Assembly: GCF_006345805.1 (NCBI RefSeq)
Contig: NW_021825566.1
Coordinates: 1 to 15,093 of the forward strand
Length of the DNA stretch: 15,093 nucleotides
Direction of reading: 5' to 3'
Source: Octopus sinensis
Taxonomy: Eukaryota
The notes under the pieces were generated by a model, which saw only the letters and a program-made list of their open reading frames with translations, searched no databases and was not told where the DNA came from. The position numbers and the translations under genes were made by a program. Below are positions 6,441-6,993 of the stretch, piece by piece (the first letter of the stretch is position 1; each line of letters opens with the position of its first letter).

Positions 6441-6992
6441 GAGTGAGAGAGCAGTTCATGCCATCAAAGTGACACTGGGGTAAAATATACGAAGCCAATA
6501 CACCCATCATGACTACCCGTCTGATAAAGTACACCAGGCACATGCATCACAACCATATGTGCGCGACATGGTGATCTCATATCAAGATAAACAGCACATG
6601 ACCTTGCAGGTGGGGCCCAGTTAGAATTTTCTCTTCATTTTGAGTAGCCCATCCTGCTCAAACGGTCCCTGAATAAGGGTTGCTTTAGGATGTTGAACGA
6701 AACACCTTGTTTTCCAGAGGTAACCATTCAAACTCCAAAGAATTCCTCTCAACACATGGCCATGATGCTCCCCCACTACTTTGCTCGCGTGATCAGAGAT
6801 GCACATATCGTCAGCCACTAAGGGACATGCTCACTGGTTAAGGTCAAACAACTGACAAGCAAATCTGTGGTATTGAGCAGAATATTTGCTGCAGCCCACC
6901 TTTTATAGCAAGATTAAAACAATGTACATGATAACACTTCCAATCAGTAAGATCAGAAGCCATGAGAGCCACTGCCTGGTACTGCATCAGGG

Positions 6993-6993
<1 letters not shown>
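6441..6993 (-). mobile_element. Unclassified 553-bp non-coding retroposon, longer (possibly full-length) copy, inserted in (TAA)n
   Basis: Homologous to 5199-5555, with sharp boundaries against (TAA)n on both sides. No conserved ORF and no clear tRNA B box. Confidence 0.8.

What the first reader, a model, noticed from the sequence alone, without database searches (positions are those of the whole stretch)
6441..6993. 553-bp non-coding, non-tRNA element that behaves like a Dong-mobilised passenger
Seen: the two copies share exactly the same left end. The shorter copy is truncated only at the other end, which is the 5'-truncation signature of target-primed reverse transcription on the minus strand. 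There is no conserved ORF, no convincing B box, and no obvious 3'-end similarity to the adjacent Dong 3' UTR. Inference: either a non-autonomous element hijacking an R4/Dong RLE without a shared tail or tRNA head, or the long 3' UTR of a second R4-clade family. SINE-like partners of RLE elements are less commonly reported than partners of APE-type LINEs, so this is the best candidate here for an undescribed system.
Basis: partly seen in the sequence, partly recalled or inferred. Interest (0 to 1): 0.72.

Follow-up and report, generated by a model that had tools for sequence, protein, structure and literature searches.

The report
TAA-tailed non-coding retroposon, two octopus copies
Two old copies of a non-coding mobile element sit with a broken Dong-type jumping gene inside one TAA repeat of an octopus genome; the element was probably copied in by Dong-type machinery, but this window cannot show whether it is an independent parasite or the tail of another jumping gene.

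Summary
Copy B (6441-6993) and copy A (5199-~5555) are 82-85% identical. On the minus strand they end at the same base (..CTCTCTCAYTC) in front of an (AAT)n run. A lacks B's first ~183 nt. Both lie head-to-tail with a 5'-truncated Dong/R4-type LINE (5636-6383) inside one (TAA)n microsatellite of an octopod genome.

The element has no tRNA, Rfam, Pfam or RLE-profile match. A six-frame search of 5.8 billion proteins found nothing. I found no HDV-like ribozyme at its 5' end beyond chance, and no similarity to the neighbouring Dong 3' UTR.

It is a (TAA)n-tailed non-LTR retroposon, most likely inserted by Dong-type target-primed reverse transcription.

The novel claim is that 553 bp is a complete, independent, non-tRNA passenger. 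That needs a genome-wide pile-up of 5' ends, and no octopus genome could be searched by DNA here. Related LINEs have 3' UTRs of 73-208 bp, and 465-469 bp in one family. A UTR over 553 bp would therefore be unusual but possible.

My estimates: non-autonomous passenger about 0.45, LINE 3' UTR about 0.30, longer SINE with an unseen head about 0.12. Interest is modest.

The parts
6441..6993 (-). Copy B of the non-coding element, 553 bp. The 5' end GCCCTGATGCAGTACC abuts (AAT)n. The 3' end is ..CTGCTCTCTCACTC.
   Evidence: No tRNA, Rfam, Pfam, RLE-profile or protein hit.
5199..5555 (-). Copy A, about 357 bp, corresponding to B positions ~183-553. It has the same 3' end (..CTGCTCTCTCATTC) and is 82-85% identical to B.
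6355..6440 (-). (AAT)n run directly 3' of copy B on the minus strand. It is B's tail and part of the TAA target array.
   Evidence: TRF; sequence.
5145..5198 (-). (AAT)n run directly 3' of copy A on the minus strand. It is A's tail.
   Evidence: TRF; sequence.
6994..7377 (-). 384-bp imperfect (AAT)n array 5' of copy B. It is the upstream part of the TAA microsatellite that received the insertions.
   Evidence: TRF, (128 units, 90% matches).
5558..5634 (-). (AAT)n run that is the tail of the Dong-type LINE fragment and also the 5' flank of copy A.
   Evidence: TRF. The independent copy L042 ends in the same way.
5636..6383 (-). 5'-truncated Dong/R4-type LINE. Frame-shifted remnants of the C-terminal zinc-knuckle and restriction-like endonuclease domain lie at 6383-5843, and a 3' UTR of about 208 bp at 5842-5636. 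It is a dead copy of the kind of element whose enzyme presumably inserted the other two units.
   Evidence: RLE profile hit E 8.5e-54. Best protein relatives are from Octopus bimaculoides. The two best PDB hits of the profile are the RLE domain of R2 proteins, E 0.1. L042 is 84% identical over 763 aligned columns and has the same 3' end plus a TAA tail.

Best explanation
The two units are old, independently inserted copies of one non-coding, (TAA)n-tailed non-LTR retroposon family in an octopod genome.

Proposed mechanism:
- A Dong/R4-type LINE protein (reverse transcriptase plus restriction-like endonuclease) nicks a (TAA)n microsatellite.
- The (UAA)n 3' end of the element's RNA pairs with the nicked repeat.
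- The nick primes reverse transcription from the fixed 3' end.
- Copying that stops early gives copies of different length at the 5' side.
- Repeated hits on the same microsatellite build the head-to-tail stack seen here: TAA, B, TAA, Dong fragment, TAA, A, TAA.

I think it somewhat more likely than not that the RNA is a non-coding passenger copied in trans, recognised through little more than its (UAA)n tail, and that it is not the end of a LINE's own mRNA.

Shown: the copies, their common 3' end, the TAA flanks, the RLE LINE neighbour, and the absence of coding or RNA-gene similarity.
Inferred: the enzyme, tail-based priming, trans-mobilisation, and whether 553 bp is the whole unit.
For: - Two copies with a base-exact common 3' end and different 5' ends.
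- TAA arrays on both sides of both copies.
- Same strand as the adjacent RLE LINE, whose own tail is (AAT)n.
- Dong elements are documented to target TAA microsatellites, including in a mollusc (PMC3812793).
- Dong-R4 is abundant and recently active in Octopus vulgaris (PMC13282606).
- Related LINEs in other marine contigs form the same head-to-tail TAA-separated stacks (L001).
- The sequences just upstream of the TAA tail differ among those LINE copies, so the tail is the one feature they all share.

For the passenger reading specifically:
- No RLE-profile hit in 553 bp even with filters off and E<=10, while the neighbouring LINE fragment, whose frame is already broken by shifts, scores 8.5e-54.
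- No Pfam hit and no hit in any of six frames against 5.8 billion proteins.
- In 21 related LINE copies the distance from the end of the RLE domain to the tail is 73-208 bp in 17, 465-469 bp in three copies of one family, and in one copy no nearby tail was found (1447 bp to the next short run).
Against: - Only two copies were seen, so a discrete 5' end is not demonstrated.
- No octopus genome could be searched by DNA. The one 24-kb O. vulgaris locus fetched lacks the element.
- One related LINE family does have a 465-469 bp 3' UTR, so a UTR over 553 bp is not excluded.
- No promoter, RNA-gene head or 5' ribozyme was found that would explain how an independent RNA is made and trimmed.
- There is no similarity to the neighbouring Dong 3' UTR, so recognition by that family's protein is an assumption.
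- The predicted fold of the element is not more stable than shuffled sequence (z -1.4).
Confidence: 0.45

Rival explanations
1. Both copies are ordinary 5'-truncated fragments of an autonomous (TAA)n-tailed LINE, a second Dong/R4-type family, whose 3' UTR is longer than 553 bp. The LINE's own protein copies its own mRNA in cis. Nothing non-autonomous is involved.
For: - A common 3' end with variable 5' ends is the standard picture of truncated LINE copies.
- Several Dong-R4 families exist in octopus (PMC13282606).
- A related family has a 465-469 bp 3' UTR.
- The adjacent Dong fragment is itself a short truncated copy.
Against: - There is no coding remnant anywhere in 553 bp.
- 17 of 21 related copies have UTRs of 73-208 bp.
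- The one long UTR is inflated by AT-rich internal repeats, unlike this 45% G+C, non-repetitive sequence.
Confidence: 0.3
2. The copies are 5'-truncated pieces of a longer conventional SINE whose pol III head (tRNA-, 5S- or snRNA-derived) lies upstream of position 1 of copy B and is missing from both copies.
For: - SINEs make up about 11.6% of the O. vulgaris genome, with hundreds of unclassified families (PMC13282606).
- Other SINE-like units in the window end in microsatellites.
- A possible tRNA-like head lies just upstream of the same TAA array.
Against: - The unit would then exceed about 630 bp, which is long for a pol III SINE.
- Copy B carries TTTT runs at positions 75 and 509, which would stop pol III.
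- B's 5' end abuts a clean (AAT)n run.
- No head was seen.
Confidence: 0.12
3. This is not retroposition. A piece of unique DNA next to a TAA microsatellite was duplicated locally by unequal exchange or replication slippage between TAA arrays, and one copy later lost part of its sequence.
For: The copies are only 1.2 kb apart, in direct orientation, and embedded in arrays of the same repeat that could mediate exchange.
Against: - The sequence between the copies is an unrelated LINE fragment with its own tail, not part of a duplicated block.
- Homology stops exactly at the TAA junctions.
- 18% divergence with a base-exact shared end next to a TAA tail is what retroposon families show.
Confidence: 0.05

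Closest known systems
Dong / R4-clade LINEs (Bombyx mori Dong, DongBg of Biomphalaria, octopus 'Dong-R4' families)
   Same: Insertion within (TAA)n microsatellites, a (TAA)n 3' tail, a fixed 3' end with 5' truncation, and head-to-tail stacking. A dead member lies between the two copies.
   Different: The element contains no RT or RLE coding sequence or remnant, and no similarity to the neighbouring family's 3' UTR. Continuity with an upstream ORF is untested.
R2 SIDEs (short internally deleted elements of Drosophila R2; Eickbush & Eickbush 2012, described in PMC3774820)
   Same: Non-coding parasites of an RLE-type, site-specific LINE, with no tRNA head.
   Different: SIDEs keep the parent's 5' HDV-like ribozyme and its 3' UTR. 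Here no ribozyme was found beyond chance, and no 3' UTR similarity to the one Dong family available.
Classical tRNA-derived SINEs with a LINE-matching 3' tail (Ohshima & Okada model)
   Same: Short non-coding retroposon that depends on a LINE enzyme, with a common 3' end and a repeat tail.
   Different: No pol III head. At 553 bp or more it is long. Only the microsatellite tail is shared with the candidate partner, not a 3' sequence block.
Tail-only ('relaxed') recognition as in Alu/L1 through poly(A)
   Same: The only feature shared by passenger and LINE would be the simple-repeat 3' tail. From my own knowledge this is how L1 mobilises Alu and processed pseudogenes.
   Different: Here the tail would be (UAA)n and the enzyme an RLE LINE whose target is the same repeat. 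I did not find this described for R4/Dong in the papers searched, and it is not shown here.

Membership tests
Pol III SINE (tRNA/5S/7SL/snRNA-derived) | RNA-gene-derived head with an internal pol III promoter (A and B boxes or equivalent) | tested here: not met
   ARAGORN finds no tRNA in the window. No Rfam family matches inside 6441-6993 at E<=1 on the whole window or at E<=10 on the element alone. TTTT runs lie at B positions 75 and 509.
Pol III SINE (tRNA/5S/7SL/snRNA-derived) | 3' region shared with the partner LINE | tested here: not met
   Local alignment to the adjacent Dong 3' UTR scores 16, against 16-18 in shuffles. Only the (AAT)n tail is shared. Other Dong families could not be tested.
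Pol III SINE (tRNA/5S/7SL/snRNA-derived) | Many copies sharing one discrete 5' end | not testable with these tools
   Only two copies are available. No octopus genome is searchable by DNA. K-mer scans of the metagenome and viral collections gave 0 hits.
R2-type SIDE (internally deleted RLE-LINE derivative) | HDV-like self-cleaving ribozyme at the 5' end | tested here: not met
   No ribozyme family in Rfam at E<=10. With a perfect P1 stem required, the full descriptor (P1, P3/L3, P1.1, P2) gave no hit starting at position 1. With one P1 mismatch allowed and P2 not required, there were 10 hits against 15.8 +/- 8.8 in shuffles. The descriptor was home-made, so a divergent ribozyme could be missed.
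R2-type SIDE (internally deleted RLE-LINE derivative) | 5' and 3' ends identical to those of a full-length parent LINE | tested here: inconclusive
   No match to the neighbouring Dong family's 3' end. The 5' end of any octopus Dong, and the other Dong families, were not available.
Dong/R4 LINE (the element as its 3' UTR) | (TAA)n target and (TAA)n tail, with a fixed 3' end and 5' truncation | tested here: met
   (n = 2 copies).
Dong/R4 LINE (the element as its 3' UTR) | Continuity with an RT/RLE reading frame in the same unit | tested here: not met
   Within the 553 bp available there is no RLE-profile hit, no Pfam hit and no protein hit in six frames. Whether longer copies reach an ORF is not testable here.
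Dong/R4 clade (the neighbouring LINE at 5636-6383) | Single ORF with RT followed by a CCHC knuckle and a PD-(D/E)xK restriction-like endonuclease, plus TAA specificity | tested here: met
   The RLE domain is present. In relatives it is the C-terminus of 1125-aa RVT_1 proteins. The TAA tail is present. Clade placement by RT phylogeny was not done, because there is no RT in the window.

The most novel reading that the evidence does not exclude
The 553-bp unit is a complete, promoter-less, non-tRNA, non-coding retroposon. A Dong/R4 restriction-like-endonuclease LINE copies it in trans, recognising nothing but its (UAA)n tail, which pairs with the nicked TAA target. That would be a tail-only passenger system for an RLE-type, microsatellite-specific LINE. 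It would be analogous to Alu/L1 poly(A) hitch-hiking and distinct from R2 SIDEs, which keep the parent's ribozyme and 3' UTR.
Probability: 0.3. Interest if true: 0.55.

Novelty: new member of a known kind. Interest (0 to 1): 0.3.

Why it matters
If the element proves to be an independent passenger, a site-specific RLE LINE could mobilise foreign RNAs that share only a microsatellite tail. That would extend the 'relaxed' template choice known for L1 to the oldest LINE lineages. It would also help explain how TAA microsatellites in octopus genomes grow into stacks of retroposons. If it is a LINE 3' UTR, it is routine repeat annotation. Either way, the locus is a clear example of repeated Dong-type insertion into one TAA array.

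Tried and rejected
1. Six-frame translation of the element, joined with X spacers, against 5.8 billion proteins, to fish out contigs carrying other copies. No hit.
2. Exact k-mer scans of conserved 20-31-mers:
   - Metagenome collection, two scans: 0 hits.
   - Viral contigs: 0 hits.
   - Prokaryote genomes: 35 hits, each a single exact 20-mer match in a bacterial or MAG contig, most of them alpha-proteobacteria or Streptomyces. I judged them chance matches.
3. megablast against complete E. coli genomes, prompted by an 'E. coli' UniRef protein that is really octopus Dong. No match.
4. Routes to octopus DNA:
   - The O. bimaculoides UniProt fragments are not in the contig index.
   - ENA hits turned out to be non-octopus contigs.
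   - Logan contigs are 1.1-1.6 kb and contain only Dong.
It shares SINE families with the window, which confirms an octopod origin, but it has no copy of the element.
5. HDV-like ribozyme at the 5' end, as in B. mori Dong. Rfam and a descriptor scan were both negative.
6. Shared 3' structure with the Dong UTR. The last 80 nt of both copies fold into a similar hairpin (z -1.6 and -2.8), but the Dong UTR has no counterpart, and two sequences cannot show covariation.
7. A 15-of-16-nt match between B's 5' part and the Dong ORF. It is isolated and short, and I judged it chance.
8. G+C content as a discriminator. It is uninformative: related UTRs span 25-49%.
9. Full-text search for the element's k-mers in papers. 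None found.

Full report
**What the window is.** The window is rich in microsatellites and SINEs.
- Three of its repeat families recur in a 24-kb Octopus vulgaris locus (L038, GCA_951406725.2), at 77-96% identity for the longer matches.
- The one protein-like remnant near the finding has its closest relatives in Octopus bimaculoides, at 70-94% identity.
- The window is therefore from an octopod genome. The species was not determined.

**Checking the observation.**
- The finding is real at the stated coordinates. blastn of 6400-7040 against the window finds a second copy at 5158-5555 (85% identity, E 9e-129).
- A profile built from the pair finds only these two places.
- Read on the minus strand, copy B (6993->6441, 553 nt) starts GCCCTGATGCAGTACC directly after an (AAT)n run. 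It ends ..CTGCTCTCTCACTC directly before another run.
- Copy A ends ..CTGCTCTCTCATTC before its own (AAT)n run. It starts at about position 183-192 of B.
- Over the shared part the copies are 82% identical, with 31 transitions, 16 transversions and one larger indel.
- Homology stops at the repeat junctions, and the DNA between the copies is unrelated. They are therefore separate old insertions, not a duplicated block.
- TRF places (ATT)n arrays at 5145-5198, 5558-5634, 6355-6440 and 6994-7377.
- On the minus strand the layout is: TAA array, B, TAA, LINE fragment, TAA, A, TAA.

**The neighbour.**
- The stretch 6383-5843 (minus strand) carries frame-shifted remnants of a C-terminal domain.
- A profile built from the protein hits matches it at E 8.5e-54.
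- That profile has a CxxC...H....C knuckle followed by the conserved motifs RPDI, IDM.VP and KYKDLE.E.
- Searched against all PDB sequences, a profile of this domain built from 25 of its members (alignment A2) gives as its two best hits the restriction-like endonuclease (RLE) domain of two R2 proteins, with the PD...D...K motifs aligned. The statistics are weak (E 0.1).
- In related elements on non-octopus marine contigs, the domain is the C-terminus of RVT_1 proteins of about 1100-1200 residues.
- Those elements end in (TAA)n and stack head-to-tail in TAA arrays (L001).
- An independent octopod copy from a Logan assembly (L042) is 84% identical to 5616-6354. It ends ..GTCAAACATAA|AATAAT, and the window copy ends ..GTCAAACATAG|AATAAT.
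- Dong elements are documented to target TAA microsatellites, including in a snail (PMC3812793).
- 'Dong-R4' is abundant and recently active in O. vulgaris (PMC13282606).
- Calling the neighbour a 5'-truncated Dong/R4-type LINE is justified. Clade placement by RT phylogeny was not possible, because the window holds no RT.

**What the element is not.**
- There is no tRNA.
- There is no Rfam match within it, either at E<=1 on the whole window or at E<=10 on the element alone.
- There is no Pfam match in the three minus-strand frames.
- With filters off, there is no hit to the RLE profile in any frame.
- A six-frame translation hit nothing among 5.8 billion proteins.
- There is no similarity to the neighbouring Dong 3' UTR beyond shuffled controls. 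One isolated 15-of-16-nt match to the Dong ORF is best taken as chance.
- B. mori Dong processes its 5' end with an HDV-like ribozyme that cuts exactly at the TAA junction (PMC3774820), so I looked for one here.
  - Rfam finds none.
  - With a perfect P1 stem required, the full descriptor scan (P1, P3/L3, P1.1, P2) finds nothing starting at position 1.
  - With one P1 mismatch allowed and P2 not required, it finds 10 hits against 15.8 +/- 8.8 in shuffles.
- The whole element does not fold better than shuffled sequence (z -1.4).
- The last 80 nt of both copies form a similar hairpin (z -1.6 and -2.8). Two sequences cannot test that structure.

**Mechanism.**
- The anatomy fits target-primed reverse transcription by a Dong-type enzyme. 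The supporting features are a fixed 3' end, a (TAA)n tail, TAA repeats on both sides, variable 5' ends, the same orientation as the Dong fragment, and stacking within one microsatellite.
- Among related LINE copies, the bases just upstream of the tail differ from one to the next, and the tail is the one feature they all share. This fits priming through pairing of the (UAA)n RNA end with the nicked repeat.
- These steps are inferred. None was tested.

**Passenger or LINE tail?** This question carries the novelty, and it needs a census of 5' ends across an octopus genome. I could not run that.
- No collection that holds octopus assemblies can be searched by DNA.
- K-mer scans of the collections that can be searched found nothing relevant.
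- The 24 kb of O. vulgaris sequence obtained has no copy.

The indirect evidence is as follows.
- The 553 bp hold no coding remnant, although the adjacent LINE fragment, whose frame is already broken by shifts, is still recognised at E 8.5e-54.
- In 21 related LINE copies, the distance from the end of the RLE domain to the tail is 73-208 bp in 17. It is 465-469 bp in three copies of one family. One copy has no nearby tail (1447 bp to the next short run).
- The long UTR in that one family is swollen by AT-rich internal repeats.
- A UTR longer than 553 bp of complex, 45% G+C sequence would be unusual but not impossible.
- Against an independent element, no promoter, RNA-gene head or ribozyme was found, and two copies cannot define a 5' end.
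- With two copies one cannot even say whether A is truncated or B is extended.

My estimates are about 0.45 for a non-autonomous passenger, 0.30 for the 3' UTR of a second Dong-type family, 0.12 for a longer SINE whose head is missing from both copies, and 0.05 for local duplication without retroposition.

**Comparison with known systems.**
- It behaves like a Dong/R4 insertion, but it fails the membership test for a LINE within the sequence available, because there is no ORF.
- It fails the test for a pol III SINE, because it has no head and no shared 3' block.
- It fails the test for an R2-type SIDE, because no ribozyme and no shared 3' UTR with the one family available were found.
- The closest functional analogy is tail-only template choice, as in Alu/L1.
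- The papers I could search describe SIDEs for R2. None that I read describes a passenger of R4/Dong. Repbase and Dfam could not be consulted, so 'uncatalogued' is not established.

**Verdict.** The claim of an undescribed system remains open and is moderately likely at best. In a genome with hundreds of unclassified SINE and unknown repeat families, the finding is of modest interest until the genome-wide census is done.

Noticed in passing
window 5636-6383 (minus strand): 5'-truncated Dong/R4-type LINE with frame-shifted remnants of a zinc-knuckle plus restriction-like endonuclease domain, a 3' UTR of about 208 bp and an (AAT)n tail. An independent octopod copy (L042) is 84% identical and ends in the same way.
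   Followed up: yes
window 7381-7500 (minus strand): Directly upstream of the 384-bp (AAT)n array lies a stretch with A-box-like (TTTAGTGGTTAGGG) and B-box-like (AGTTCGATTCG) motifs about 40 nt apart. It could be the head of a tRNA-derived SINE whose tail is the same TAA array. ARAGORN and Rfam do not recognise it, and no second copy was found.
   Followed up: partly
window 12330-12560 (+) followed by 12560-14030: A SINE-like unit, with a tRNA-like start GGAGGCGCGTGGCTGGTGGTTAAGG and 74% identity to part of L042, is followed by a 1.45-kb (ACAT)n array. ACAY repeats are the known target of Waldo-type LINEs (PMC3812793), so another microsatellite-specific LINE/SINE pair may be active here.
   Followed up: no
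window 10863-11065, 11550-11752, 11733-11935: Three copies of a SINE family of about 200 nt, two of them overlapping head-to-tail. The family is shared with the O. vulgaris rhodopsin locus L038 at up to 94-96% identity.
   Followed up: partly
window 8084-8511 and 1708-1894: Copies of another octopus SINE family, matched in both orientations in L038 at 73-81% identity.
   Followed up: partly
window 10400-10750 (+ strand, two frames): Frame-shifted remnant that reads like the C-terminal tail of an RTE-type LINE ORF (..RQRRLRLSGHCV..LHGDVRRGK..TYIDNLTADTGLE..). It was recognised by eye only. In the combined protein search the opsin part of the query took all the listed hits.
   Followed up: no
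window 3640-4290 and 4440-4990: A long (GAT/ATG)n-type trinucleotide tract of about 650 bp, then a (GATA)n array of about 550 bp. Both produce long spurious ORFs, for example 4305-5111.
   Followed up: no
L001 1-20333; also L046: In non-octopus ENA contigs, related Dong-type LINEs form dense head-to-tail stacks on one strand. Each unit ends 85-135 bp after the RLE domain in a (TAA)n run. This is the same architecture as in the window.
   Followed up: yes
L043 10513-10982 (also L044, L045): One related LINE family has a 465-469 bp 3' UTR made largely of AT-rich short tandem repeats (ATTTATT-like). UTR length in this group can therefore grow well beyond the usual ~100 bp.
   Followed up: partly
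protein P0005: A UniRef entry labelled Escherichia coli is 81% identical to the octopus Dong RLE domain. It most likely comes from contamination of a bacterial assembly with cephalopod DNA.
   Followed up: no
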